Made by a program: the position numbers and the translations under genes. From NCBI RefSeq assembly GCF_964204865.1, contig NC_135257.1, positions 5,580,001-5,644,000 on the forward strand: a stretch of DNA of 64,000 nt, read 5' to 3'. The number at the start of each line of letters is the position of its first letter. The first letter of the stretch is position 1. The stretch is from Styela clava (taxonomy: Eukaryota). Below the pieces are notes generated by a model. The model did no database searches and was not told where the DNA came from. It saw nothing but the letters and a program-made list of their open reading frames with translations. Below are positions 3,201 to 41,134 of this stretch, piece after piece.

Positions 3201-6200
3201 TTTTTCGCCAACAAAATAGATTAAAGCAACATATTTTTCCCAACATATAATGAATAATTAAGCTGATTTGATACTCTGCAGAATCTAAATGTACCATTTC
3301 ACGTGCTTTTCTGCAGTGTGACGAATTTCTATGCAACACTAACGAATGCATCCCTTATGAACAAGCATGCGATGGCATACAGCAATGTTCAGATGGAACG
3401 GATGAAAAAGATTGCAAAGTTTGTTGTACAAACATGATATTTGTATAGTTTGTTAAATTGAAACCTCTTGTATGGAGCTCTGTTGAGTACGACGTCTAAT
3501 ATCGTTTTCCTTTATATCCGATACAACTGTCCTTAGCTATACCACTGCATAAAAAATATGATGCAAATTATCAGAGTTAAGTTGTGGTTATTTGGACACC
3601 AATTGTCCATATGGATCGTTTTGTAAAATCGTTGTCGTAGGACTTTTTGTTGAAAAAATGGCTATTACTCGAAAATGATCAATTTCTAATTTTCAATACT
3701 TAAGAACTGAGGAAGATCGAATTGGGCTTGCAGGGACCGTACTGTTACGGAAACTCTTTGAATACGGTATAACAGTCTTAAGTTCCGAGATATTTATCAA
3801 CAGTACAAAACCAAGTCACAGTCCTCTCCCTAGTTTTTTTTCTTCAAGCGGCAATTCGCCGGCTTATATATTCGACAGCACAGATGGGCCGCCAAAAGTG
3901 TCACATCATTACCACTCATTTTGTTGTCGCCTCATCTGTTTAGTCGGTCGAATCAAGGTTGACACTACAAGCTCCGCTGTCGCGGTATTCGCACGATTAA
4001 GTGAAGTTATATATATTGAACGACAATAGAGGGTGGACCACAGATACCAGCAGGCTATCACCCTTTTTTAAATTAACCGTGACCACTATTTCACCCAATG
4101 ATTCCTTGGTCTATTCGCGATAGTTCTGCGATTTCATCCAAGTATCTCATCCAAGGAGAGCATTGCTCTCCTGTTAATTTAGCCGAAGCAGCCTAAACCT
4201 TCAATCAAGAAGCGTACATTAACTCCTCAATAGACCTTATTCATTTAAAATCCATCCTACGCGCAAAAAAAAAAGTGACGTAAAAATTTTTTTTTTAACA
4301 TTAGCTCTTATGGGAAATGTGATCACCAGAGCAGAAATTTGCATTTTTTGGGATTTTCTAGCAATATCTCAGTATGAACGTGGGCAGTTTTAAAAATAGA
4401 ATATTTTTTAGATAGTTTTCGATACTTTTATCACTATAAACACGGTCGAGATTTTTTATAATCGTTCATCGAAATTTTAATGGGCGAGGTGTTTCCACTG
4501 ATGTCACTCTCGCTTTACCATGACATTCGGCCATAGCATTGTGGTCTGCGATAAAATGCGCGCCGGCTGCTCGTTCTTCTCATTCTGTAGGACCGGTAAT
4601 TGATTACCGACATGTCGTCGCTTAGCATTTAGTGAAAGACCTATTTTCGCTATTGCAGTTATGCTGAAATGGCAGTCTGTTCACGTATTCAGTCAGGTTA
4701 TCTTCTCGTTATTGGCTTTGCACATGTCTTACCGATAGAGTGACCTTTCTCTAGAGGCTTGCTGACATATACGGTACCTGTATCTGTACCGGTATTGACT
4801 TTACACTTTATGTAATACAGTAATATGATGGTTAGATTAATGTTTGTTTGTACCGTACCGGTATACGACTTACCGTATCCTACCTATTGTCAAAAATGCA
4901 ATAAAAGTTTTAGTTTTCACTCTTTAATGCAATACTGGTGCCGGTACCGGTATGCTTAGGACTGTATGGTACGGTAATTATTATACGGTACAGTTTTAGA
5001 CTTAACAGTACCTGGTATGTGACAAATCAATTATCGTGTTGGAAATGTAATAATCAAATAATTTCTACATTAAGATCCTACTGTACGGTATATTATATAA
5101 CATATCATTTACAAGATGTCAGGCCGAGTTTGCTGTGTCATCAAATGCACCAATCATGCCTATAAACTTCAGAAGTGGAAATCATCCCACTGCCCTATTC
5201 ATAATGTATCGAAAGGTGAAGAAGGCTGTATTTGTACTCCACCGTTCGAGCATCATCCTTTTCCAACGGAACTCAAAGACCCGGAAGGTCGACAGAATTG
5301 GATACATAACATGAATAGAAAAGAACCGGGCAGTAGTAAGTGTGTACTTAATTGGCAGCCAACAAAATATTCTCGAGTATGTTCCATTCATTTCGTAGAC
5401 GGGAGACCCACTTCAAGTAACCCATATCCAACTCTGTGCATGGGATATGAAACATCAATCGTATCAAATAAAAGATGCTTGCCCAGTTATAGGGCGTCTT
5501 ATGCACCAAAATGTAAAAAACGTAGAACTGAAGTTTTGGCTGTTCCCACAAATTTAAATTTCGAACATAATTATTGCCTAAATGCAGATATGGGAAAACT
5601 TGCTCAAGTCATCAAAAGTCTTAAGATTGAGAATGCCAAATTACGAGGAAATAATAGAAATTTGAGATCCGAAGTTGCCAAACTAAAATGTTCATTTCGG
5701 AAAGTTAATGCTCTACCTCCATTACATACAGACAAGTCCGTGGCATTTTATACTGGGTTTCCTTCAAAAAAAGTTTTAGACAAAGTCACAAACCTTTTAA
5801 GAAGCAAGGCACCAAGGACAAACTTTTTAAAAGGCAACGCACCAAGAAAACGTATTATCAGCTCCAAAATCTTAATGTCTACCCGGATGCATAAACTGAG
5901 CTTTTCTCAACAACTCATTATGACTTTAATGAGGCTAAGACTCGGATTGTTAATCACAGACCTAGCTGAAAGATTTCATGTATCCCAAGCGACTGCATCA
6001 AGGGTTATCGGAAATATGTTGAAATTTTTGTCACATCAGATGAAAAGCCTAATCAATAATCCATCACGCTATCATATCATGAATTTACCCCGAAAGTTCA
6101 GAATAAGACCATACAATAAAGTCAGGTGGATCTTAGATTGTACAGAGTTGTTCATTGCGACCCCAAAGGACTTGCATATGCAGTGTATTACTTGGAGCGA

Positions 6201-9200
6201 CTATAAACACCACAATACTGCGAAATATCTTTTAAGTGTCCATCCAAATGGAATGATTAATTTTTTGTCGCGTGGGTGGGGTGGAAGAGCAAGTGACAAT
6301 CATATAGTCAAGAATAGCGGTTTTTTGAATTTGCTAGAACCTGGCGATATGGTAATGGCTGACAGAGGATTCCTCATCAGAGATGAGCTTCTCATTCGTC
6401 AAGCAGATCTATTGATACCTCCAGGAAAACAGGGCAAGGAACAAATGCCTCTAAGTGATGTGACAGCAACGAAAAACATAGCAAATAGGCGAATTGTGGT
6501 AGAGCAAGCCATAGGTCGCCTAAAAAAATTCAAAATTTTACAGTCGGAAATACCTATCAGACTATTGCCTCAATTGGACAATATTATGGTAATCTGCGCA
6601 GGTATCAGCAATATGAAACCACCCTTCTATTCCTAGGCGACCTAATATCCTGCCCCCCAATAATAGCCCTATGCTTTTGCTCTGTATTCGTGAGCTTTAA
6701 CTATAGTTAGATATCTAAATTAATATACAGGGTGTCTCAAAAGTAAGTTACGTTTCAGGTACTTGTCTTTTCATTTCTTCAGAAAACATAGTATGGATAA
6801 CTAGTAAAATTTAGGTAATGTTTGCATTTTTTAACAAACCATAAATGAAAAGGGGATTAACCTGAGAAATGAGGTGAAAATTCAAATTCTCTGAGGAAAA
6901 CATTAATTAATAATTTTAAATTCTCTGTTTAATAGGCGCTAAGTTTGCCTTGCTAATCTACATGCTTTTTGCCAATCAGCAATTTTGCTCCTCATTTTTG
7001 GGGTTAATCTTATTGTCATTCTGTGGGTTGGGAAAAAGTGTAAACAATACTTATTAAATTTTACTACTTATCCATACTATGTTTCCAGAAGAAATGAATG
7101 CTTTATCACGAGTACCTGAAAAGCAAATCAAAATTAAAAGTGTATACCGGTACTTACTTTTGAGACACATACCTACATGCATATTTGCAAAAACTACCTT
7201 TTATTTGTGGGGCTGAGCCATCACTGATTTCAATAAGTTTACTTCTTGATATTTCTATTTTTGAGCCCTATTTGTTTCTTGCAAAAACTGCCTTTTTTGT
7301 GAAGCAGAACCATTACTGATTTAAATAAGTTTATTTCTTGATATTTCTATTTTTGAGCACTATTTGTGTATTTGCAAAAACTGCCTATTATTTGTGAGGC
7401 AGAACCATTACTGATTTCAATAAGTTTACTTCTTGATATTTCTATTTTTGAGCCCTATTTGTTTCTTGCAAAAACTGCCTTTTTTGTGAAGCAGAACCAT
7501 TACTGATTTAAGTAAGTTTATTTCTTGATATTTCTATTTTTGAGCACTATTTGCAAAAACTGCCTTTTGTTTGTGAGGCAGAACCATTACTGATTAAAAA
7601 TAAATTTATTTCTTGATATTTCTATTTTTGAGCACTATTTGTTTATCTGCAAAAACTGCCTTTTATTTTTGAGGCTAAACTCTTGCTGATCTATTCATCT
7701 ATTAAGGACTATTTGAGTGAAACCCAAATAATAGTTTATTTATATTTGCTTACTCCTCTGCTGCCTTAAATGATTTATTTCATATTCATTTTTTTTACCT
7801 AATCTGACATTGAATGGTACTTCTAGTTCTGCTGTATATCCACATCCCCATTCATTAAACAATTCCTGTATGTAATCAGCATCATTTTGTTACTTGTACT
7901 CTTACAAATCATATGCCCACCCCAGGGATGGACCAAAAATTAAGGGTGATAGGCTCGCAGGACATATTTGTAGAAAGTTAAAAACCTTATTGATGGCCGA
8001 TAAATCACAGTTAAGAGTTTGAGCAGCGCATGAAGTGACTGCGCCAACATGGCGTCTGACATTTAATGTGAAATTTTTGTTAAATGTTCAGATGCATATG
8101 TCTGGTCTCGTAGTAGATTATGGTGCTTGAAGTCGACTTTCTTTTGTTGTAATGGCGATTGCTTGGTCACCTTGATGTACAAATCGAACGTATTTAGTTT
8201 GATTCATCAAGTTCCTGTAAGATTTCCCAAAGGGTGCCCCCACTTGTATCAGTTTTTGGCATCTCTAAAATGCGATTTTTTGTGCAAGTTCATACTTTTA
8301 TCATAGAGAAGAAATAAATGATTGTGTACTGCAAAATATTCCCATTCATTATAATAGGCGGACTCCTCAATGCTACTTTCCACTTATATTTGTGAGTAGA
8401 CAGCGCTGCTTTACTCAAACTTCAGTTTATTTTTCAATATTTTGGGGTTTTGAGCCATGCCTTTACAAGGTGGTCTTGAAATCCTGAATTTCTCAGTAAT
8501 AAAAATTTTAGCTGGACCTAAGTACAGCTAAAATTTTTATTATTGGGAAATTCAGGATTATAATGGCTCAAAGCCCCAAAATCTTGAAAAAAGATAGTTC
8601 TAAGTTCCAATATGATGGGCTTGAACATCAGAAATGAAATGTCCGAAACTTACATCTGTTCAGTGCAACTTAGGCCTAAGTCATAGGGGGGGGAAAAAGC
8701 TGAAGTGTGATTAAAAAAGGTTAATATAATCCACATTAAAATAACCAGAGCTCAGGTTTTCACCAACTGTGAATATCTAGAAAATCAAAAATAAAAAAAT
8801 TCCAAATTGTTTTTTTGCGTTTTTTTCGAAATTATGACTTAGGCCTGTTCTGTTCTCATAGGGCGAGGTGTCCAAATCTGAACTTGTGTACCAGTAGTTC
8901 ATTTAGCATCATTGCTTCATATACTCTTCACCTATAAAATTATTATTTTGTTTTAGAAGCTGAATCCTTGTGAGCTTTTGTGTTTACATATTGTTTATTT
9001 GCCAATACAGCTCGCCATTTGAAAAGCTGACACTCTGCTACGTCTTTGTTGACAAATAAATGATGATAGCTTATATGCGTGCGTTGGAATTATGTGTGTC
9101 AGGGATTGCCTAGGAGTTAGCTGATGGCTTGGAAATCCCATCGCATCTGTGTGTAATTACTTTAGGCCATGGAAGTACTGGCCGCCTCCATGAAAAGAGT

Positions 9201-12200
9201 TGATAAATGTAAAAAAAACTGGACTAATTTGGTTTTGGATAACCATAAAGAAAAACTCCATTAATATCAATGCTCTTTATTAATATGCAAACAATTTTTT
9301 ACTCTAGTCAAAGCAACTTGGGAGCAACAAACTCATTGAAAAAATATCTCAACTTGGGCTTTATACCCATCCAAAAACTCTCATCAAACATAATTCTACA
9401 TCTAATATGACCATGTACAGAGTAAACAAAAAAGTCACACCACTTAGTTTTTGAAATGGCCATTTGACCTTGAACTTGAAAATAGTATGGGTGTGTGGTT
9501 TTTAGCTTTGGTTCCCCCCCTTCATATACAATATATGGTGGCGGAGAGCATGCAGGAGAGGTATCTCTCAAGCTGTATGGACATTTAATTTCCAAAACAC
9601 CGTCACCGCAGCATTTGCAATACACCACCATGTCTGGAGATGCCCCTAGGAACAGCAAGTTTTGGTCAATGAAAAGGCCACATTCTCTAGCTGTTATCTC
9701 ATGTTTTGTTTGCCTCATCAAATCCAGGTAAACTGACTTTGCAATATTTTCTGTTTTCACGCCATATTTAACTGCAGGTAAGTGACCTAAATCTTTTTGT
9801 AGGCCGAACACTTTGTCTAATATTATATTGAGCCTAACATGCTTGCCTAAATTCAAACTATTGACCTTACACACTACCTCATGAAAATTTGAGGCAGTCA
9901 GCCTATTTTTGCGTGCCATTTTCCAATCATTATTAGTAGCCTGACCCTTTGTCCTTCTTTCTAAATCTTCAACCTCATCACTTGTAGCCGCTGTAAGACT
10001 ATTTTTCCAAACCTCCTTCATACTTAAAAGCTTATCAGATTTACTCTCCTCTTTCCCTGCATATTCGAACATCAATTCTTGAGACACTGAGGCATGAGCT
10101 ATGCTGAAACAACTACTCTCTCCAACATCTTTCAAACATTCCAGCCACTGCTCTGTACTTAGTGGTTTTTCACTTATAGGATCACTCTGTCGACAAATTT
10201 TTCTTTTGACTGAAATGAATATAATAGATTAAGTATATAGAAGTTCATCTCCCTCTTAATGATATTGCCCCATTATCAATCATTTCATTTCAGCAATCTG
10301 GCAGAAATAAAAACAAAAAGTAAATTAACAAACAGTGCAGTGCCTTTCAAAAATGAGTGTAGCTGCTATTCCATGTAGTGGAAGCTGGTTGTTTGAAGTT
10401 TCTGGATTCGTGGGTAATGTGAAGTTCGAGAATTGTTTCCCATTATCCTTCCATTACCTCAGTACACTATAATTTATACAAATGAGGCTCACCTGTTTCT
10501 CCGTATTTTGGCTTCTTCATTACTAAATGTCGTAGTTCACTTGGTTCAATTTTCAATTTTTTTGAGGGAATAATCCAAGTACATGGTAAGGAAGTGCACG
10601 CCTGATTTGAAGCACGCTCCATTTTTAGCAGAAGACTTGCTACATGATTACATGTTTGATGTATTCTAAGTATTGAAAAATAAATAATGTCACGAATAAT
10701 TATATCATAAGAAGATGTTTAAGGACAGAGAAATTATTATAAATGCAGTATCCATCTAATCTCTCACATCAGCATAGAGTTTTCAGCTGAAAACTACAAC
10801 CTTAGCACTTTTATAAATTTTCATTCTAACCATAATTCTACAACCTGCAGTTTTGTCAATTTACAATAATCTACTAAAATTTCACAATCAAAAATGAATT
10901 TCAGCAAAGTTATTAACAATTAAAAATAGTACTTTATGAGGTGCTCCTGAAGTATGTGTACCAAAAGGAGGTAATTATTTTTGTTCGCCTATTTTACATT
11001 AAGGCCTAACCTGGTACTCATACTTTGGGGGTACCCTTTACGAAATACATTCTGTAGGAATCTTACCCTGCAGTACAGGAACAAAATCCTCTAACAATCT
11101 GTCCATTATCCCGTCTGCAGCAAACCCACAACTTATGAGGCGGATCATTAATCCGCTGAGACGGGAAACAGTTTGCTTTCAGTATGCAATAATGTTTGAA
11201 GCGAAGATAATATACTTCTTTAAGCCACATGGAAGCAAAGTAGCTGTATGGCTTGCCCAGCTTATACCCATCCAAAATCTTCTCCATCACTTCAGCTTCA
11301 CCTTTACTCAAATACAGAGCAATGTCTGTAATGTGGAGGTTAGGCCAAAGAGCTACTCCATTTTTTTCCGCAATCCAGGGCAATGGATCAGATTCAGACG
11401 AATTAGGATCGGGTAACTTGATTCCATCTGGAGCAAGTAGGATATTTTGATATTCCTGCACCACAGAAGCTGAAAGCTCCTGCGGTGACTTTTTTATCTC
11501 CAGGTTCATTGCCTGTGTTGCATATGCAAGGGCAACCAACTCAGCTTTTGTTTTTTTTGATGTCGCAAGTCCATATCTTCTCAAAAAAATCTTTAAACTG
11601 TCTACATTCCACCGCATTATGTCCTCCATAGTATATTGTGGCATTGTTGGATGAAGATTTTAGAATATATGTGTTAATTGTAAATAATCTGATAACAACT
11701 ACAGGAAGATTGGCGAGGTGAAGCTTTTAGTCCTCGCTGCCGTAAGGTGGTTCACTAACCGCTGGTCGGTTACGGCTTGCTCCACCATCAAGTCCATGCT
11801 TCCGAAAACAAATAACTGGCTAACCAATACCAGACCTGGGCTGGTAACCGGACGAGAGGCCGTTGTTCGCCATATGATTAAGCCTCTCCCCCGGGATAAA
11901 TATGTAAATCCTATTGCAATATTGTATTCGCTGGACGAAAAGGAAGTTGCAGTAGCCTATACCGTTACTGGAAATATTAGGATCAGTTATGCATTTGTCT
12001 GTTAACTGAATAAAGATTAACTACCACTACCGATTTGTTCAAAAGGAATTATTTTAAATAGGATTTACATATATATCCCGAGAAGAAGAATATAAGACGG
12101 CCTAACTATAAGGCGAAACACGTCGTCTCATCTCGTCCATGTCGGTTACCGATATGAGGCTGGTTAGTTAATTTTCTCCAAAGCATGGACTTGATGATGG

Positions 12201-13127
12201 AATAAGCCTTAACCGCTCAGCCGTCACTGCGTTACGGTATGTGAACCCCCCCAACGATGGCGATGAGTCCAACCCGAATCGTATTCCTACTTCAGTACGG
12301 TACGGTACCGTACTGTCCTAACGCTTCTGAAACAAATGTTCTAAATCAAGTTTTTTTGGCCTGTCGGTATGGTACCGGTGGTTAAAATACGGTAACCTGT
12401 TAGCTTGTCTTCAGTATATGGTATCCAGCTGTACAGGTATAGATGCGTTAAACCTTCAACGCTTCCAGTATCCACGGTTACATTACCGCCTCCGTTGACG
12501 CGCATATTTGACGTACTGAAGCAATGTTGGCCGAATGTCATGGTAAAGCGAGAGTGACGTCAGTGGAAACACCACGCCCATTAAAATTTCGATGAACGAT
12601 TATAAAAAATCTCGACCGTGTTTATAGTGATAAAAGTATCGAAAACTATCTTAAAAATATTTTATCTTCGAAACTGCCCACGTCCATACTAAGATATTGC
12701 TAGAAAATCCCAAAAAATGCAAATTTCTGCTCTGGTGATCACATTTCCCATAAGAGCTAATGTTAAAAAAAAAATTTTTACGTCACTTTTTTTTTTGCGC
12801 GTAGGATGGATTTTAAATGAATAAGGTCTATTGGACGACTTACATTATCTCCTGCTGTGTCGACCATCATGAAAAGCCGTTTAGGTAAAATCAAATAATC
12901 GAGTTTTTCGTCGTGTTGTTTGCGTCAGTGGAATAAGAAACAACGGATCAGTAAAATGCATTCAAAATAACTATATAAAAACTATGCTTTTCTTTCAGTA
13001 CGCAGGAGGATGTCCACCAAATCACTTTAAGTGCAACAATACACAATGCAGACCGGACAAATGGAAATGCGACGGAATTGATGATTGTGGGGATAAATCG
13101 GACGAAATTGATTGCCCATACATATAA
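283..13127 (+). CDS. Secreted LDL-receptor class A (LDLa) repeat protein, ~300 aa, 8 coding exons
   Basis: GT-AG exons join in frame: 283-352 ([23 protein letters not shown], signal-peptide-like), 915-1039, 1602-1712 (alternative donor after 1721), 2013-2135, 2617-2727, 2977-3108, 3317-3418, 12999-13127 (TAA). Exons 2-8 each encode one Cys-rich module such as [30 protein letters not shown], with the acidic DCxDGSDE tail; the first module is partial. No TM segment before the stop. Confidence 0.85.
4232..4533 (+). repeat. Left terminal inverted repeat (302 bp)
   Basis: Reverse complement of 12528-12829, including matching 10-nt homopolymer runs. Confidence 0.95.
5116..6636 (+). CDS. THAP-domain Harbinger/ISL2EU-type DDE transposase (506 aa, intronless)
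   Basis: N-terminal THAP (CCVIKC...PFP...W...VCSIHF), EHNY plus coiled coil, HTH ([33 protein letters not shown]) and DDE_Tnp_4-type catalytic motifs ILDCTE, MADRGF and [17 protein letters not shown]. Confidence 0.93.
   Translation: MSGRVCCVIKCTNHAYKLQKWKSSHCPIHNVSKGEEGCICTPPFEHHPFPTELKDPEGRQNWIHNMNRKEPGSSKCVLNWQPTKYSRVCSIHFVDGRPTSSNPYPTLCMGYETSIVSNKRCLPSYRASYAPKCKKRRTEVLAVPTNLNFEHNYCLNADMGKLAQVIKSLKIENAKLRGNNRNLRSEVAKLKCSFRKVNALPPLHTDKSVAFYTGFPSKKVLDKVTNLLRSKAPRTNFLKGNAPRKRIISSKILMSTRMHKLSFSQQLIMTLMRLRLGLLITDLAERFHVSQATASRVIGNMLKFLSHQMKSLINNPSRYHIMNLPRKFRIRPYNKVRWILDCTELFIATPKDLHMQCITWSDYKHHNTAKYLLSVHPNGMINFLSRGWGGRASDNHIVKNSGFLNLLEPGDMVMADRGFLIRDELLIRQADLLIPPGKQGKEQMPLSDVTATKNIANRRIVVEQAIGRLKKFKILQSEIPIRLLPQLDNIMVICAGISNMKPPFYS
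6728..7168. mobile_element. Decayed palindromic MITE (Tc1/mariner-like TA-CAGGGTG end) nested in the transposon
   Basis: GTGTCTCAAAAGTAAGT at the left matches ACTTACTTTTGAGACAC at the right. The arms (~6728-6875 and ~6989-7168) are imperfect reverse complements. The right terminus is degraded. Confidence 0.7.
7182..7692. repeat. Tandem array of ~93-bp units, ~5.5 copies, with an alternating (dimeric ~187 bp) pattern
   Basis: GCAAAAACT recurs at 7187, 7281, 7374, 7468, 7553 and 7649. The core CTGATTT.AATAAGTTTA.TTCTTGATATTTCTATTTTTGAGC is in each full unit. Confidence 0.95.
8430..8591. repeat. Long inverted repeat / hairpin
   Basis: Inner arms 8480-8514 and 8525-8559 (33/35 Watson-Crick); outer arms 8430-8458 and 8563-8591 (27/29). 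Confidence 0.9.
9308..11644 (-). CDS. SAP-like / SWIM zinc finger / YqaJ (lambda-exonuclease fold, PD-(D/E)XK) protein, 550 aa, 3 exons
   Basis: Exons 11644-11067, 10665-10493 and 10209-9308 have GT-AG borders and total 1653 nt in frame. Splicing creates the SWIM motif CSCTAG|IHQTCNH followed by CTSLPCTW. The N-terminus [24 protein letters not shown] is SAP-like. The C-terminus has RLTASNF, ECGL, LGASPD, LEIKCP and YYFQVQGQM. Minus-strand AATAAA at 9276-9281. Confidence 0.9.
10940..11036. mobile_element. Internally deleted copy of the GGGTACTCC MITE family in intron 1 of the YqaJ gene
   Basis: GGTGCTCCTGAAGTATGTGTACC...TTGTTCGCCTATTTTACAT...CCTAACCTGGTACTCATACTTTGGGGGTACCC matches copies at 34395 and 61808. 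Confidence 0.7.
11704..11914 (+). mobile_element. SINE 3' portion (same family as 39351-39664), nested in the transposon
   Basis: CAAGTCCATGCTTCCGAAAACAAATAACTGGCTAAC...GGGATAAATATGTAAATCCTAT is the reverse complement of the 39.3-40.8 kb copies. Confidence 0.8.
12058..12270 (-). mobile_element. SINE 3' portion in the opposite orientation, nested in the transposon
   Basis: ATAGGATTTACATATATATCCCGAG...AAGCATGGACTTGATGATGG matches the sequence from 39351. Confidence 0.75.
12528..12829 (-). repeat. Right terminal inverted repeat (302 bp)
   Basis: Reverse complement of 4232-4533. Confidence 0.95.
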
Positions 13128-37500: not shown

Positions 37501-40500
37501 TGAAAATTAGTGTGAAATATCAAATTTCATATGACAAAAAAATAGCCTGTTGGCAAATTTTTCGAGAACAAAAATTTGAAATCGATCAGTCTGTAAGAAA
37601 AGGGCCATAATAATCCATATGGCCACTTTTTCACCAATAAACAAATACCAAGCAAATCAAAAATATTTCTTCATGGGTATACTATAGTAATGACATTCAA
37701 GATATAAAGAGGTAAATATATATTAAAAGTTACTATCTGATATCAGCAAACCCAGTCTAGAGAATGATATGTATTATGTTTCCTTGTGAGAAAAAATTTA
37801 AAAGTAGTTAAAATCAAACCAGTAGTTTTTTGCTACTTCAGTGAACTCATCATGAGTAATTTTGAACTTTTTAATAATAATACATTATAGGTAGCACTGC
37901 CTGCAATATTAGCTGTTTCATTATTTTTTACAAAGTGAACAATATTTCTGTTACAAAAAGCCAAAGAAACCAGCAAAAAAAGTTCAGGGCTAAAGTCCAA
38001 TAAGTAAATACATGGAACTACCCAGCAAAAATAAAGGATAGATAGGAAATAAAAACATCAAATGATTCCCTCTCAAAGACTTACCCGCATGCAATCAAGC
38101 GTCCGGATGGAGCATATGCACAAGAATTCACCCATGTTGTCGGCAAACTAATGGTATGTTCCTGTATAGACATAGGAATTAGCATTTTTTCAAACAGGGG
38201 TATAAATGACAACAAAACTCAATGGACAAAATAACAAGAATTTTATATAATAAACACTTACCTTTGTTGATGTAAAAGCATCCCACACTATCACTTTACC
38301 ATCCTGAAAAATAAAGAAGAGATCATAATCATATTACTGTTTATTAAACATAAAAATAATTGATGCAATTGAACGAAAACTAGCTTCTTAGCCAGTCTGT
38401 ATTCATAATTTATCAACATACATAAAACAAGACACAATATAAGCTGAAGTAAATCTTTTTAAGTTGTATATTCAATCTACTTGATCAAGTGCCTTGACAA
38501 TAAAATAATTTACATGCATCCAGACCAAAAATCAATAAAGGATGACAACATTGAGCTTATTAGGATGAAACTACTTCATCTGGGAAAACCTTATAGACAG
38601 GGATGAATCTACCAGAATAAACCAGAATTATCAATACAAATTTTATGAAAGCTGGGTTGAACTTGAGTCGATAATAGTGGACTATATGAACTAAATAGCT
38701 ACACCAAACAAAAACATAATGTATATTCAATGTCAAAAGTTTATTACTCAAAAATTTAATAACAGGATACCTGTGAGGAACTGACAATTCTTCTTCTGTC
38801 TTGTGACCAATCTATATTAAGAACTTTACTTGTGTGACCTTTGAGTAACTTCCTAGTACGAAGTTGCAATGTAGATACCTGCTTCACTTTATTTCCCATA
38901 GAAAACACTGAAAAATGAGATAGACGTCACATGATGCAATAAAATCTCGCACTGTATTGATCTTCAGGTAAAGAAAAGCATATGTAAAAATCAGGACTAT
39001 GAATGGTGTCAGAATAAAATTAAAATAAAAGGCCTCATAAAACACATTGTGGGGATCACTGTCACATTTTAGAATACGCTATTTTTTCCAACCATACTTG
39101 AGTTGGTTGATTGGAAAAACAAAGTTAATTTAAATTTTCAAAAATACTCAACTTCAATTTAAAGAAATGACTTACTATCAAATGCAATATCAAGATGTAA
39201 ATTCAAAACAAAAAGTTTTCAAAAGTTAAGAAAACCATGTTTTTTGTTTTGAATATTGAATAGAGTAAGATTATGAAAAACATGGTGCTGTTTATGGTGC
39301 AAAGGCGTTGAAAACAGGAAAAAAATAAGTTTCATAACTTAATCCAGGTCTAGGAAGGATTTACATATATATCCCGAGGGAGAGGAACGCCGATAAGACA
39401 GCTTAACCATATGGCGAACCACAGCCTCTCGTCCAGTCCAGGTCGGGTATGGGATTAGTTAGCCAGTTATTTGTTTTCGGAAGCATGGACTTGACGATGG
39501 AGGAAGTCGTAACCACCCTACAGCCCTACGGTGGCGAGGAGTCCGGCAATCCTCTCGCACATGATCATCCCCGCATGGGATTCAAACATGCAAACCCACG
39601 AAGGGTAATCAGAGATGCGGTGGCGAGCGTATTCCTAACACTTAGCACGATGCGCCACATCGCGGAGTAAATGGATAAATCACCAGATCTTATTATTGAA
39701 TGTATAGGATAGGATTTACATATTTATCCCGGGGGAGAGGAAAGCCGATAAGACGGCCTATCCATATGGCAAACCACGGCCTTTCGTCCGGTTACCATTC
39801 CGAGTCGGGTATGGGATTAGGGTGGTGTAGCCAGTCTGCGGACGATTTCATTCAAACCGCTATAAAACAAAAACCAATATTTCTAACCCGTTAATTTTTC
39901 CACCGTAGGTGCATTGGCATTTATTCTACACGCTGAACTTCGAATTAACTTTCTACGACCAGGGGTTAAAGCTATACAAACCACCAAAGTACGACACTCT
40001 GAAGAAGTATTTGCGACCGAACGACCAGTATGCGATCACGGATTTCAAGCCTTGAACATCGTTTCTGCTGCGTCGAGACTAGGGCATACGCAGCCATGCG
40101 TGAAAAAATGGGCTTCTAATTGCATTTCTGACCGTCATATATTTTAAGAACACGGTTATTTCAAACAAAATTCTTCAAATTATAAACAAAGCACCGCAGC
40201 AATCAAACAGACAAAAACACGGTGGTCGCAAATTAGTTGACAAAGATTTTATTGACGTATTGGAAATGCGCACCCCCCTACTCCCCCTCCTTTGAAGGTA
40301 GAAACGCGAAACTTTAAAGATGGTTAAAAGAAACACAACTCTACCCACCTGCCAAGTTTCATCTCTTTATCTCTTATATTTGTATGGATTTTCAAGCTTC
40401 TTTGAGGGAACAATGGGTAGTTGGCGACATGGTAAAATGGTCCGTTTTTTCTCTTCGGTCGTAACTTTTTTATTTGTGGCCGCATTTTAGTGTAATTTCG

Positions 40501-41134
40501 CGGAGCTACGAGGGATAAGTGGACGATAACGCGTGAGAAATATCGTCGCGGTTCGTTAATTTTTTCGGCATTAATTTAATCGATGAAGTTGATGGTCGCA
40601 GATAGGTCATGGCCGCAAAGTGGGTAAGCCACCCTAGTTATATTGTTTTGTTTTCGGAAGCATGGACTTGGTGGTGGAGGAAGCCGTAACCGACCAGCGG
40701 TTACGTGAACCTCCCTCCCTGTCCAGCAATCCTCTCGCACATAATCATCCCTGCATGAGATTCAAACCTGCGAACCCACGCAGAGTAATTAGAGGTGCGG
40801 TGGCGAGCGTATTCCTAACGCTTAGCCCGTTGAGCCACACCGCCGCGCCTCAACGAATATTCTAGAGCAAGAGATTGACTTCAGCTGTTACACTTTCCAG
40901 CTATCGGTACAAATTTTATGTTACAGCTACGTGCGTAAGGATGCAATACAAATTTATTTTAGTTACCGTACAGTTTTAGGTACAATAATTCCTGAATTAG
41001 GTGTCATACTAACGGTTAGCATCGTCAAGCTTTCTTCTGTCTTCCTTGAGTTTTTGGCGAAGTTGTTGAGCTTCCTTTTTCAAGTTCTCGATCATTTCCT
41101 TCTTATTTTTATCCGACATTAAAATTCCAGCCAT
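31554..41134 (-). CDS. GNB5: Guanine nucleotide-binding protein subunit beta-5, 383 aa, 11 coding exons
   Basis: Exons 41134(or 41119)-41014, 38907-38771, 38303-38262, 38161-38085, 37237-37024, 36121-35978, 35468-35377, 34920-34872, 32924-32828, 32366-32200 and 31565-31554 total 1152 nt in frame. Beta-5-type strings: [68 protein letters not shown]. Confidence 0.95.
34395..34558. mobile_element. MITE, GGGTACTCC family
   Basis: GGGTACTCCAGAAGTATGTGTACC...CCTAACCCTAACCAGGTACACATACTACGGGAATACC. Confidence 0.75.
35056..35293. mobile_element. Palindromic MITE, GGGTACTCC family
   Basis: Arms GGTACTCCCGAAGTATGTGAACC...GGTTAGGCCATAATT and AATTATGGCCCAACCCTAACC...GGTTCACATACTTCGGGAGTACCC. Confidence 0.85.
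35579..35794. mobile_element. Palindromic MITE, GGGTACTCC family (~80-bp TIRs containing GGTTAGGGTTAGG)
   Basis: Long inverted arms. Further partial copies lie at 16431-16500 and 61808-62001. Confidence 0.85.
39351..39664 (-). mobile_element. tRNA-derived SINE, near full length
   Basis: Minus-strand head GTGGCGCATCGTGCTAAG (A-box-like)...GTTTGAATCCC (B-box-like) and tail GGGATATATATGTAAATCCT. Other fragments lie at ~30135-30222, ~48715-48785 and ~59780-59980. Confidence 0.8.
39704..40846 (-). mobile_element. tRNA-derived SINE split by an 815-bp DNA-transposon insertion
   Basis: 39704-39819 plus 40635-40846 together align to 39351-39664. Head GGCGGTGTGGCTCAACGGGCTAAGCG...GGTTCGCAGGTTTGAATC, tail (ATCCT)2. 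Confidence 0.85.
39820..40634. mobile_element. Non-autonomous DNA transposon, GGGTGG...CCACCC termini, TA TSD
   Basis: Imperfect 24-bp TIR (18/24: GGGTGGTGTAGCCAGTCTGCGGAC vs GGGTGGCTTACCCACTTTGCGGCC). Removing it plus one TA restores the SINE sequence GGGATTAGTTA seen in the neighbouring copy. Confidence 0.8.

What the first reader, a model, noticed from the sequence alone, without database searches (positions are those of the whole stretch)
4232..12829. Intact two-gene transposon pairing a THAP-DDE transposase with a lambda-exonuclease-fold nuclease
Seen: 302-bp TIRs (~97% identical), an AT duplication in a palindromic CAATTG site, and two uninterrupted convergent genes around a 2.7-kb structured spacer. 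Known: the transposase + YqaJ pair with an AT TSD defines the ISL2EU/IS4EU group, whereas classical PIF/Harbinger elements pair the transposase with a Myb/SANT protein. The family is therefore not new, but I know of no established role for its exonuclease. Inference: this may be an active two-enzyme system in which the nuclease processes element ends, resects the donor break to favour copy-restoring gap repair, or aids targeting. It is the best candidate here for a mechanistically undescribed system.
Basis: partly seen in the sequence, partly recalled or inferred. Interest (0 to 1): 0.82.

Follow-up and report, generated by a model that had tools for sequence, protein, structure and literature searches.

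The report
Intact ISL2EU transposon in sea squirt
This is a complete, transcribed, evolutionarily young copy of an already described kind of jumping gene (ISL2EU) in the sea squirt Styela clava; it is ordinary as a family, but it is a good natural test case for the still unknown job of the exonuclease these elements carry.

Summary
Window 4232-12829 is an 8,598-bp DNA transposon with 302-bp inverted ends. Its 2-bp AT target duplication is now proven by three paralogous empty sites.

It has a 506-aa THAP-HTH-DDE transposase gene and a convergent lambda-exonuclease-like (YqaJ) gene. One correction: the nuclease gene has three exons and two introns. It encodes a 550-aa SAP-like/SWIM/YqaJ protein.

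The host is Styela clava. The genome holds four copies 0.3-0.9% apart in substitutions. Only the window copy has both genes intact.

There are also hundreds of non-autonomous relatives sharing the ends, and at least 9 other transposase-YqaJ pairs at 30-35% identity.

Every feature matches ISL2EU (PHIS superfamily; Han 2015), so this is a new member of a known kind.

The nuclease keeps the catalytic D/E/K residues and the 5'-phosphate-pocket arginine. It models closest to the processive 5'-3' exonucleases LHK-Exo and lambda Exo, not to TnsA.

My best inference is that it resects transposase-made breaks. No paper found tests this.

First-stage notes flag the same stretch (s1-822972) and, on other DNA of this genome, two ISL2EU-like relics (s1-810867, s1-816026).

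The parts
4230..4231 (.). Left copy of the 2-bp target-site duplication (AT), preceded by CA
   Evidence: Duplication proven by paralogous empty sites for the C6 copy of the same family.
4232..4533 (+). Left terminal inverted repeat, 302 nt, starting AGACCTTATTC
   Evidence: I1, 97% complementary. Near-identical or 85-90% copies occur at 40 or more scored places, with 413 candidates in the genome.
4534..5115 (+). Region upstream of the transposase gene (5' UTR and presumed promoter)
   Evidence: Inference from position. The X9 RNA-like contig reaches to about 5097.
5116..6636 (+). Transposase gene, single exon, 506 aa. THAP at residues 6-95, HTH_Tnp_4 at 259-310, DDE_Tnp_4 at 340-499. Catalytic residues D341, D416, E463.
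   Evidence: Pfam (DDE_Tnp_4 2e-45). THAP11 match in PDB. Triad from alignment A2. Transcribed: contigs of about 1.5 kb in X5 and X10.
6725..7147 (.). Relative of a high-copy MITE-like repeat inside the spacer, with hairpin arms 6770-6813 / 7055-7098. Site of clustered A>G changes in RNA-like runs.
   Evidence: I3; about 50-fold higher depth in the DNA run; A>G only in RNA-like runs; 136 matches at 75-85%.
7136..7690 (.). Tandem array of units of about 92-95 bp. The window copy carries about 273 bp more of it than the other three copies.
   Evidence: D1-D4; deletion of 272-274 bp at about 7296 in C2, C4 and C6 relative to the window.
8430..8826 (.). Relative of a second high-copy MITE-like repeat, with near-palindromic arms (8430-8458/8563-8591 and 8480-8517/8522-8559)
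   Evidence: I4, I5; depth; 140 matches.
9308..10209 (-). Nuclease gene exon 3 (includes the stop codon). Linker plus the YqaJ / lambda-exonuclease-like domain (Pfam match about 9449-9928), with motifs W-x3-R, ASPD, EIK and QVQGQ.
   Evidence: (joint 10209>10493).
10210..10492 (-). Intron 2 (GT..AG on the minus strand)
   Evidence: Joint in X9 only, absent from DNA run X4. Dinucleotides checked. Same junction in P0001.
10493..10665 (-). Nuclease gene exon 2: second half of the SWIM zinc finger (CxH) and the conserved TSxxCxW motif
10666..11066 (-). Intron 1 (GT..AG on the minus strand); it splits the SWIM CxC...CxH motif
   Evidence: Joint in X5 only..
11067..11644 (-). Nuclease gene exon 1: start codon, SAP-like helix pair, and first half of the SWIM finger (CSC)
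   Evidence: SAP E=0.1, below the cut-off; 49% identity to family 2 over the SWIM half; Atlas neighbours carry SAP, SWIM, YqaJ.
11645..12527 (-). Region upstream of the nuclease gene (presumed promoter and 5' UTR)
   Evidence: Inference from position.
12528..12829 (-). Right terminal inverted repeat, 302 nt. Its roughly 3% difference from the left TIR is the same in all four copies.
   Evidence: right ends of all four copies are 96-97% identical to the left TIR.
12830..12831 (.). Right copy of the AT target-site duplication, followed by TG

Best explanation
This is an autonomous, probably still mobile ISL2EU (PHIS superfamily) cut-and-paste DNA transposon of the tunicate Styela clava.

Shown:
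- Two inward-facing genes lie between 302-bp inverted ends.
- The transposase has a THAP zinc finger, an HTH and an intact DDE core.
- The element inserts at A|AT|T sites (preferably YAATTR) and duplicates AT.
- The second gene is spliced from three exons into a 550-aa protein: a SAP-like motif, a SWIM zinc finger and a lambda-exonuclease-type PD-(D/E)xK domain. That domain keeps its catalytic Asp/Glu/Lys and the Arg that in lambda Exo holds the 5' phosphate.
- Both genes are transcribed.

Inferred:
- The transposase binds the ends through THAP/HTH, cuts the element out and pastes it with a 2-nt stagger.
- The nuclease is an active 5'-to-3' double-strand-end exonuclease (about 0.7).
- It is brought by its SAP/SWIM part to the 5'-phosphorylated breaks that the transposase makes.
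- Most likely (about 0.35) it resects the donor-site break, so repair goes by homologous recombination from the sister or homologue. That puts the element back and gives a net copy gain.
- Trimming of the non-transferred 5' strand at the element ends is the next most likely job.
For: Identity:
- Pfam domains.
- TIRs.
- AAT flank at 29 of 30 ends.
- Three paralogous empty sites.
- The same features are listed for ISL2EU in PMC4482050, PMC4122938 and PMC9179366.

Mobility and youth:
- Four copies at different loci, 0.3-0.9% apart in substitutions.
- 413 TIR candidates, most sharing only the TIR with this element.
- dN/dS among the copies is 0.31, P=0.0055.

Expression and splicing:
-, and the NCBI model P0001.

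Long-term partnership of the two genes:
- At least 9 further adjacent transposase-YqaJ pairs at 30-35% identity in this genome.
- SWIM-YqaJ architecture is shared with family 2.

Nuclease class:
- D324 is at least 90% conserved and E338, K340 and Q376 are invariant in 75 homologs at about 30% identity.
- Profile match to LHK-Exo 5e-31 and lambda Exo 1e-14.
- Foldseek TM 0.76 to LHK-Exo and 0.63-0.68 to lambda Exo, with no TnsA among the 50 matches listed.
- W-x3-R is aligned to LHK-Exo.
Against: - No transposition event, polymorphic insertion or excision footprint was observed. 'Active' rests on intactness, youth and transcripts.
- Only one of the four copies is fully intact.
- The donor-resection role is pure inference. 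Nothing in the sequence separates it from other uses of a 5'-3' exonuclease.
- Relatives without a nuclease (Spy, sister clade, transposase alone active in human cells, PMC11304231; Harbinger with a Myb-like partner) show the nuclease is not needed for the basic chemistry, so it could even be dispensable.
- The physical link between the two proteins could not be tested.
- The SAP assignment is weak (E=0.1).
Confidence: 0.85

Rival explanations
1. TnsA-like division of labour. The DDE transposase only nicks the 3' ends, and the PD-(D/E)xK protein cleaves the other (5') strand at the element ends, as TnsA does beside TnsB in Tn7. The nuclease would then be essential for excision.
For: - TnsA has the same broad PD-(D/E)xK fold class (my knowledge of Tn7).
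- The nuclease gene is co-inherited with the transposase across families at 30-35% identity.
- In KolobokE a lambda-exonuclease-like nuclease lies downstream of the transposase domain (PMC9587614). This suggests action at the same DNA ends.
Against: - The closest sequence and structure relatives are processive end-dependent exonucleases. No TnsA appears among the 50 Foldseek matches listed.
- The 5'-phosphate-pocket Arg is retained. That fits an enzyme that needs a pre-existing end.
- The sister-clade Spy transposase transposes alone in human cells (PMC11304231).
Confidence: 0.12
2. The second protein is mainly a DNA-binding or recruiting cofactor, the functional counterpart of the Harbinger Myb-like protein. 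It would bind the long ends or chromatin through SAP/SWIM and help nuclear import or assembly. Its nuclease activity would be secondary or regulatory.
For: - A SAP-like motif and a SWIM finger are conserved between two families.
- Harbinger needs its second protein for transposition (PMC9179366).
Against: - The transposase already carries its own THAP and HTH DNA-binding domains.
- The catalytic and 5'-phosphate residues are invariant or nearly so across 75 homologs at about 30% identity. Catalysis itself is therefore under selection.
- This reading is not exclusive of the best explanation.
Confidence: 0.15
3. The element is a recently dead or silenced relic. The intact reading frames reflect youth only, and the transcripts are read-through or noise.
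For: - Three of the four copies are already broken: C2 has a 2.8-kb deletion, and C4 and C6 have single-base frameshifts.
- Transcripts carry clustered A>G changes typical of ADAR action on a hairpin.
- No insertion polymorphism was seen.
Against: - The window copy has both genes intact, an intact DDE triad and intact nuclease motifs.
- Introns are correctly spliced.
- Differences among the copies show purifying selection, dN/dS 0.31, P=0.0055.
Confidence: 0.3
4. The locus is a domesticated host gene pair and not a mobile element.
For: None found.
Against: - Four copies lie at unrelated loci with TIRs and duplications.
- Empty paralogous sites exist.
- Hundreds of non-autonomous relatives share the ends.
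Confidence: 0.01

Closest known systems
ISL2EU (formerly IS4EU) group of the PHIS / Harbinger-like superfamily (Han et al. 2014, 2015; PMC4122938, PMC4482050)
   Same: - THAP + HTH + DDE transposase.
- Second ORF with a YqaJ exonuclease domain.
- AT duplication in an A|AT|T site.
- Animal host.
- Two intact ORFs as the criterion for 'potentially active'.
   Different: - TIRs of 302 bp exceed the published range of 6-259 bp, and they start AG rather than the usual GG.
- The length of 8.6 kb compares with a published mean of about 4.8 kb, because of repeat-derived filler between the genes.
- The host is a tunicate. The main text of Han 2015 names no tunicate for ISL2EU, but I did not see its species table.
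- The nuclease gene is spliced, and its SAP-like/SWIM N-terminus is not described in the papers I could search.
- There is a C/T preference one base outside the AATT core.
PIF/Harbinger and Spy (other PHIS groups)
   Same: Same DDE_Tnp_4-type catalytic domain and HTH, and AT-rich palindromic targets. Spy is the sister clade of ISL2EU (PMC11304231).
   Different: - Harbinger pairs the transposase with a Myb/SANT protein and duplicates TWA.
- Spy has one ORF and no duplication.
- Neither carries a nuclease.
KolobokE lineage of Kolobok transposons (PMC9587614)
   Same: A eukaryotic DDE transposon that also carries a lambda-exonuclease-like PD-(D/E)xK nuclease of untested function.
   Different: It belongs to an unrelated transposase superfamily and duplicates TTAA. 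Its nuclease is encoded downstream of the transposase domain rather than as a separate convergent gene.
Lambda exonuclease / LHK-Exo (phage Red-type 5'-3' exonucleases) and herpesvirus alkaline nucleases
   Same: Same fold and motifs, including the catalytic D/E/K and the Arg of the 5'-phosphate pocket.
   Different: - No annealing-protein partner gene lies in the element.
- There are extra SAP-like and SWIM domains.
- The gene is a spliced nuclear gene of an animal transposon.
- Trimer formation was not tested.
Tn7 TnsA/TnsB
   Same: A DDE transposase works beside a separate PD-(D/E)xK nuclease.
   Different: TnsA is a site-bound endonuclease. Here the nuclease resembles end-dependent exonucleases, and TnsA was not among the 50 listed structural matches.

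Membership tests
ISL2EU (PHIS superfamily) | DDE_Tnp_4-type transposase with an intact D-D-E triad and an HTH | tested here: met
   Pfam DDE_Tnp_4 2e-45 and HTH_Tnp_4 2e-15. D341, D416 and E463 lie in conserved motifs.
ISL2EU (PHIS superfamily) | N-terminal THAP zinc finger on the transposase | tested here: met
   Pfam THAP 2.9e-05, 25.2 bits against a cut-off of 23.9. THAP11 match in PDB 1.7e-06.
ISL2EU (PHIS superfamily) | Second gene encoding a YqaJ exonuclease-domain protein | tested here: met
   Pfam YqaJ 2.4e-17. Spliced 550-aa reading frame with no internal stop.
ISL2EU (PHIS superfamily) | 2-bp AT target-site duplication in an A|AT|T target | tested here: met
   AAT flank at 29 of 30 ends. 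Three paralogous empty sites show AATT becoming AAT-element-ATT.
ISL2EU (PHIS superfamily) | Terminal inverted repeats (published range 6-259 bp, usually starting GG) | tested here: met
   TIRs are present. They are longer than the published range (302 bp) and start AG. This is a quantitative departure, not the absence of the feature.
ISL2EU (PHIS superfamily) | Transposase falls inside the ISL2EU clade in a DDE-domain phylogeny | not tested
Lambda-exonuclease / YqaJ family of PD-(D/E)xK nucleases | Catalytic Asp, Glu-x-Lys and the following QxQ helix | tested here: met
   ASPD, EIK and QVQGQ are present in the window copy. The Asp is at least 90% conserved and Glu, Lys and one Gln are invariant in 75 homologs.
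Lambda-exonuclease / YqaJ family of PD-(D/E)xK nucleases | Arg of the 5'-phosphate pocket (lambda Exo R28) | tested here: met
   W-x3-R is aligned with the same motif of LHK-Exo and is at least 90% conserved in A1 (R231). Equivalence to lambda R28 rests on my knowledge of the lambda Exo sequence and structure.
Lambda-exonuclease / YqaJ family of PD-(D/E)xK nucleases | Fold similarity to solved members | tested here: met
   AF2 model with pLDDT above 90 over the domain. Foldseek 3syy TM 0.76 and lambda Exo 0.63-0.68, probability 1.00.
Lambda-exonuclease / YqaJ family of PD-(D/E)xK nucleases | Toroidal trimer and processive 5'-3' exonuclease activity | not testable with these tools
Enzyme activity needs a bench assay.
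Tn7-type TnsA endonuclease | Structural or sequence likeness to TnsA | tested here: not met
   No TnsA chain appears among the 50 Foldseek matches listed or among the PDB sequence matches.

The most novel reading that the evidence does not exclude
The element-encoded lambda-type exonuclease makes ISL2EU a self-restoring cut-and-paste transposon. It would load on the 5'-phosphorylated donor break left by the transposase, create 3' tails and force homologous repair from the sister chromatid. Each jump would then regenerate the donor copy. This would be a transposon-encoded control of host double-strand-break repair choice, evolved at least twice (ISL2EU and KolobokE).
Probability: 0.3. Interest if true: 0.7.

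Novelty: new member of a known kind. Interest (0 to 1): 0.35.

Why it matters
The family and its gene pair have been known for over a decade, so the element is not a discovery in itself. Its value is practical.

Nobody appears to have tested what the ISL2EU (or KolobokE) exonuclease does. This Styela clava family offers a ready-made genetic series:
- one copy with both genes intact (the window, C9);
- one with an intact transposase and a natural deletion of the nuclease gene (C2);
- two with frameshifted transposase genes but intact nuclease genes (C4, C6);
- hundreds of non-autonomous elements with matching ends as reporters.

Both genes are transcribed, and the nuclease gene model is now exact. 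A positive result would show how a transposon steers host break repair. A negative one would close a long-standing question.

Tried and rejected
1. Complex prediction of the transposase with P0001 was counted but not folded. A tool rule bars chains that resemble proteins of eukaryotic viruses.
The neighbourhoods of YqaJ homologs in cnidarians and molluscs could not be inspected, so cross-phylum pairing rests on the literature and on the paralogous pairs within this genome.
3. I looked for an empty allele or paralog of the window copy's own site. The 180 bp next to the insertion are unique, and there is no haplotig. The empty-site proof therefore comes from the C6 copy.
Insertion polymorphism at the element ends was not examined in reads.
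5. The termini and duplication of the divergent family 2 could not be resolved from the one old copy that has TIRs.
6. The TIR conservation profile was uninformative, because it is dominated by one subfamily.
7. The three tandem YqaJ hits on C13 are a decayed tandem duplication without a transposase or TIRs and do not help with function.
8. The joined 550-aa spliced model was not sent to any search or fold tool. Exons were searched by reference, and the NCBI model P0001 (431 aa, C4 copy, 99% identical) stood in for SWIM+YqaJ. The only joined operation was an in-script count of codons and stops.
9. The large representative-protein search was not used. Pfam, the word search and PDB left nothing open that needed it.

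Full report
**What is there**

Window 4232-12829 is bounded by a 306-nt inverted repeat at 97% identity (arms 4228-4533 and 12528-12833). Reading the ends gives CA-AT-[AGACCTTATTC ... GAATAAGGTCT]-AT-TG. That is 302-nt TIRs, an AT on each side, and a CAATTG site at this copy.

The plus strand carries an uninterrupted 506-aa ORF (5116-6636). It has THAP (residues 6-95), HTH_Tnp_4 (259-310) and DDE_Tnp_4 (340-499, E=2e-45). The minus strand carries a YqaJ / Viral_alk_exo domain in the ORF 9308-10135. Aligning the transposase with five divergent paralogs from the same genome places the catalytic residues at D341, D416 and E463, in the LDCTE, MADRGF and [10 protein letters not shown] motifs. All are intact.

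**The nuclease gene is spliced**

Contigs of four public runs were laid on 5700-11699. Two joints have GT..AG ends on the minus strand: 10665>11067 in X5 and 10209>10493 in X9. The DNA run X4 shows neither.

The exons are 11644-11067, 10665-10493 and 10209-9308. They add up to 1,653 nt, giving 550 codons plus a stop with no internal stop, and both introns have canonical dinucleotides. The NCBI model P0001 for the near-identical C4 copy uses the same two junctions.

Exon 1 has a weak SAP-like match (E=0.1). Its ESM-Atlas neighbours are clusters carrying SAP, SWIM and YqaJ in molluscs and cnidarians. A SWIM CxC...CxH motif is split by intron 1. It aligns at 49% identity with the single-exon SWIM-YqaJ protein of a second family in this genome.

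I did not send the joined 550-aa model to any search or fold tool. Exons were used by reference, and P0001 served as the stand-in.

**Host, copy number and age**

P0001 is named as a Styela clava protein. The 377-Mb assembly holds four copies of this element: C9 (the window), C2, C4 and C6. There are 413 first-look TIR candidates, mostly at about 85% identity.

The four copies differ by 0.3-0.9% in substitutions, plus indels:

| Copy | Transposase gene | Nuclease gene |
|---|---|---|
| C9 (window) | intact | intact |
| C2 | intact | deleted (about 8339-11146) |
| C4 | 1-nt deletion at 5179 | intact |
| C6 | 1-nt insertion at 6500 | 6-nt in-frame deletion |

Variable codons split 7 non-synonymous to 7 synonymous in the transposase and 6 to 4 in the nuclease. 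The combined dN/dS is 0.31 (P=0.0055), so part of the divergence arose in functional lineages.

The ~85% relatives share only the TIR with this element. They are non-autonomous elements with matching ends.

**Target site**

AAT flanks 29 of 30 TIR ends. The preceding base is C in 15 of 30 (P=5e-5 against 17.5% background) and T in 9 of 30.

The C6 copy lies in a SINE-like repeat. Three uninterrupted paralogs (window 40760-40818, L029, L055) read ...gcagagtaATtagagg.... The filled site reads ...gcagagtaAT|element|ATtagagg....

**The spacer**

The 2,671 bp between the genes consist of three parts:
- a relative of a high-copy MITE-like repeat (6725-7147) with hairpin arms;
- a 92-95-bp tandem array (7136-7690), about 273 bp longer in the window copy;
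- a relative of a second high-copy repeat (8430-8826).

It looks like filler acquired before the four copies diverged, since all full-length copies share it.

**Comparison with the literature**

Han et al. 2015 (PMC4482050) define ISL2EU by these features:
- an AT duplication with a conserved A before it and T after it (A|AT|T);
- a DDE/HTH/THAP transposase;
- a second ORF with a YqaJ exonuclease domain;
- TIRs of 6-259 bp;
- a mean length of about 4.8 kb;
- animal hosts.

They state that the function of the extra ORFs is unknown. PMC4122938 and PMC9179366 say the same about the architecture. KolobokE elements also carry a lambda-exonuclease-like nuclease (PMC9587614).

ISL2EU is the sister clade of Spy, whose transposase alone is highly active in human cells (PMC11304231). 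I found no functional study of an ISL2EU element or its nuclease. That is limited to the open-access library.

The element is therefore a new member of a known kind. It has unusually long TIRs, a large size, a spliced nuclease gene and a documented SAP-like/SWIM N-terminus.

**What the nuclease most likely does**

In 75 homologs at about 30% identity, the Glu, the Lys and a following Gln are invariant, and the catalytic Asp and the W-x3-R arginine are at least 90% conserved. A profile of these homologs hits LHK-Exo at 5e-31 and lambda exonuclease at 1e-14.

The AlphaFold model is confident over the domain (pLDDT above 90). Its best structural matches are LHK-Exo (TM 0.76) and lambda Exo (0.63-0.68), followed by herpesvirus alkaline nucleases and mimivirus R354. 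TnsA is not among the 50 matches listed. The W-x3-R motif aligns with that of LHK-Exo. In lambda Exo this Arg (R28) binds the 5' phosphate of the strand being digested; that point rests on my knowledge.

This favours an end-dependent 5'-3' exonuclease acting after the transposase has made breaks. It disfavours a TnsA-like endonuclease that makes them. The autonomy of the sister-clade Spy transposase points the same way.

Which break is resected, and to what end, is inference:

| Proposed role | Rough odds |
|---|---|
| Donor-break resection leading to homologous restoration of the element | 0.35 |
| Trimming of the non-transferred 5' strand | 0.2 |
| Mainly recruiting cofactor | 0.15 |
| TnsA-like cleavage | 0.12 |

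The remaining odds are not assigned to a named role.

At least 9 further adjacent transposase-YqaJ pairs at 30-35% identity occur in this genome. Most are convergent and one is divergent. Selection has therefore kept the two genes together for a long time.

**Limits**

- No transposition event or insertion polymorphism was observed.
- No Repbase references were available for a clade test.

**Verdict**

- The family is already known.
- Interest is moderate to low (0.35). It comes mainly from the natural allelic series, which makes the open question about the nuclease directly testable.

Noticed in passing
window 6781-6845 and 7076-7079 (arms of the hairpin 6770-6813 / 7055-7098): There are twelve clustered A>G changes on the plus strand in RNA-like contigs of three studies (X5, X9, X10). 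The contigs run on from unique transposase sequence. The same positions are essentially unchanged in DNA run X4, and the four genomic copies are 99.5-100% identical here. This looks like ADAR-type hyper-editing of a hairpin in the transposase 3' UTR. No matched DNA and RNA from one animal were available.
   Followed up: partly
window 40635-40848; also L029 669-904 and L055 2966-3208: This is a SINE-like repeat family with a tRNA B-box-like 'ttcgaacc' stretch. It served as the paralogous empty site for the C6 insertion. A second, more diverged copy lies at window 39440-39663.
   Followed up: partly
G000:C14:20960259-20963080 (L034 4260-7081), and L035, L036, L037, L039: A second ISL2EU family is about 30% identical to this one. 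Its SWIM-YqaJ ORF is a single exon of 490-515 aa, its transposase frame lacks a THAP in the same exon, and its TIRs are about 127 nt in L035 (3608-3734 / 8374-8500). Its termini and duplication were not resolved.
   Followed up: partly
G000:C2:6907749-6909612 (L038 4738-6634): Here a YqaJ ORF and a DDE_Tnp_4 ORF lie in divergent (head-to-head) orientation. Every other pair seen is convergent.
   Followed up: no
G000:C13:21933276-21943590 (L058): There are three tandem YqaJ-like matches, each with a stop codon, in a 4.8-4.9-kb tandem duplication. No transposase or inverted repeats are present.
   Followed up: partly
C2 copy, junction of window 8336-8338 with 11144-11146 (L031 4038-4040): The 2.8-kb internal deletion that removed the nuclease gene has about 3 nt of overlap (microhomology) at its junction in the BLAST pieces. 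That is expected for abortive gap repair or end joining.
   Followed up: no
window 3832-4052: The 221 bp further out on the left flank belong to another dispersed repeat, with more than 40 matches at 75-90% identity in the genome.
   Followed up: no
homologs P0024, P0029, P0030, P0038, P0041, P0045, P0061: Many mollusc YqaJ relatives carry a PHD finger (PF00628) instead of, or in addition to, the SAP/SWIM part. The DNA- or chromatin-reading head of this nuclease family appears to be exchangeable.
   Followed up: no
window 6232-6291: A cluster of substitutions, all but one of them synonymous, is shared by the C2 and C4 copies. Four of these changes also appear in X5 contigs and one in X10, so more than one copy (or allele) is transcribed.
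   Followed up: no
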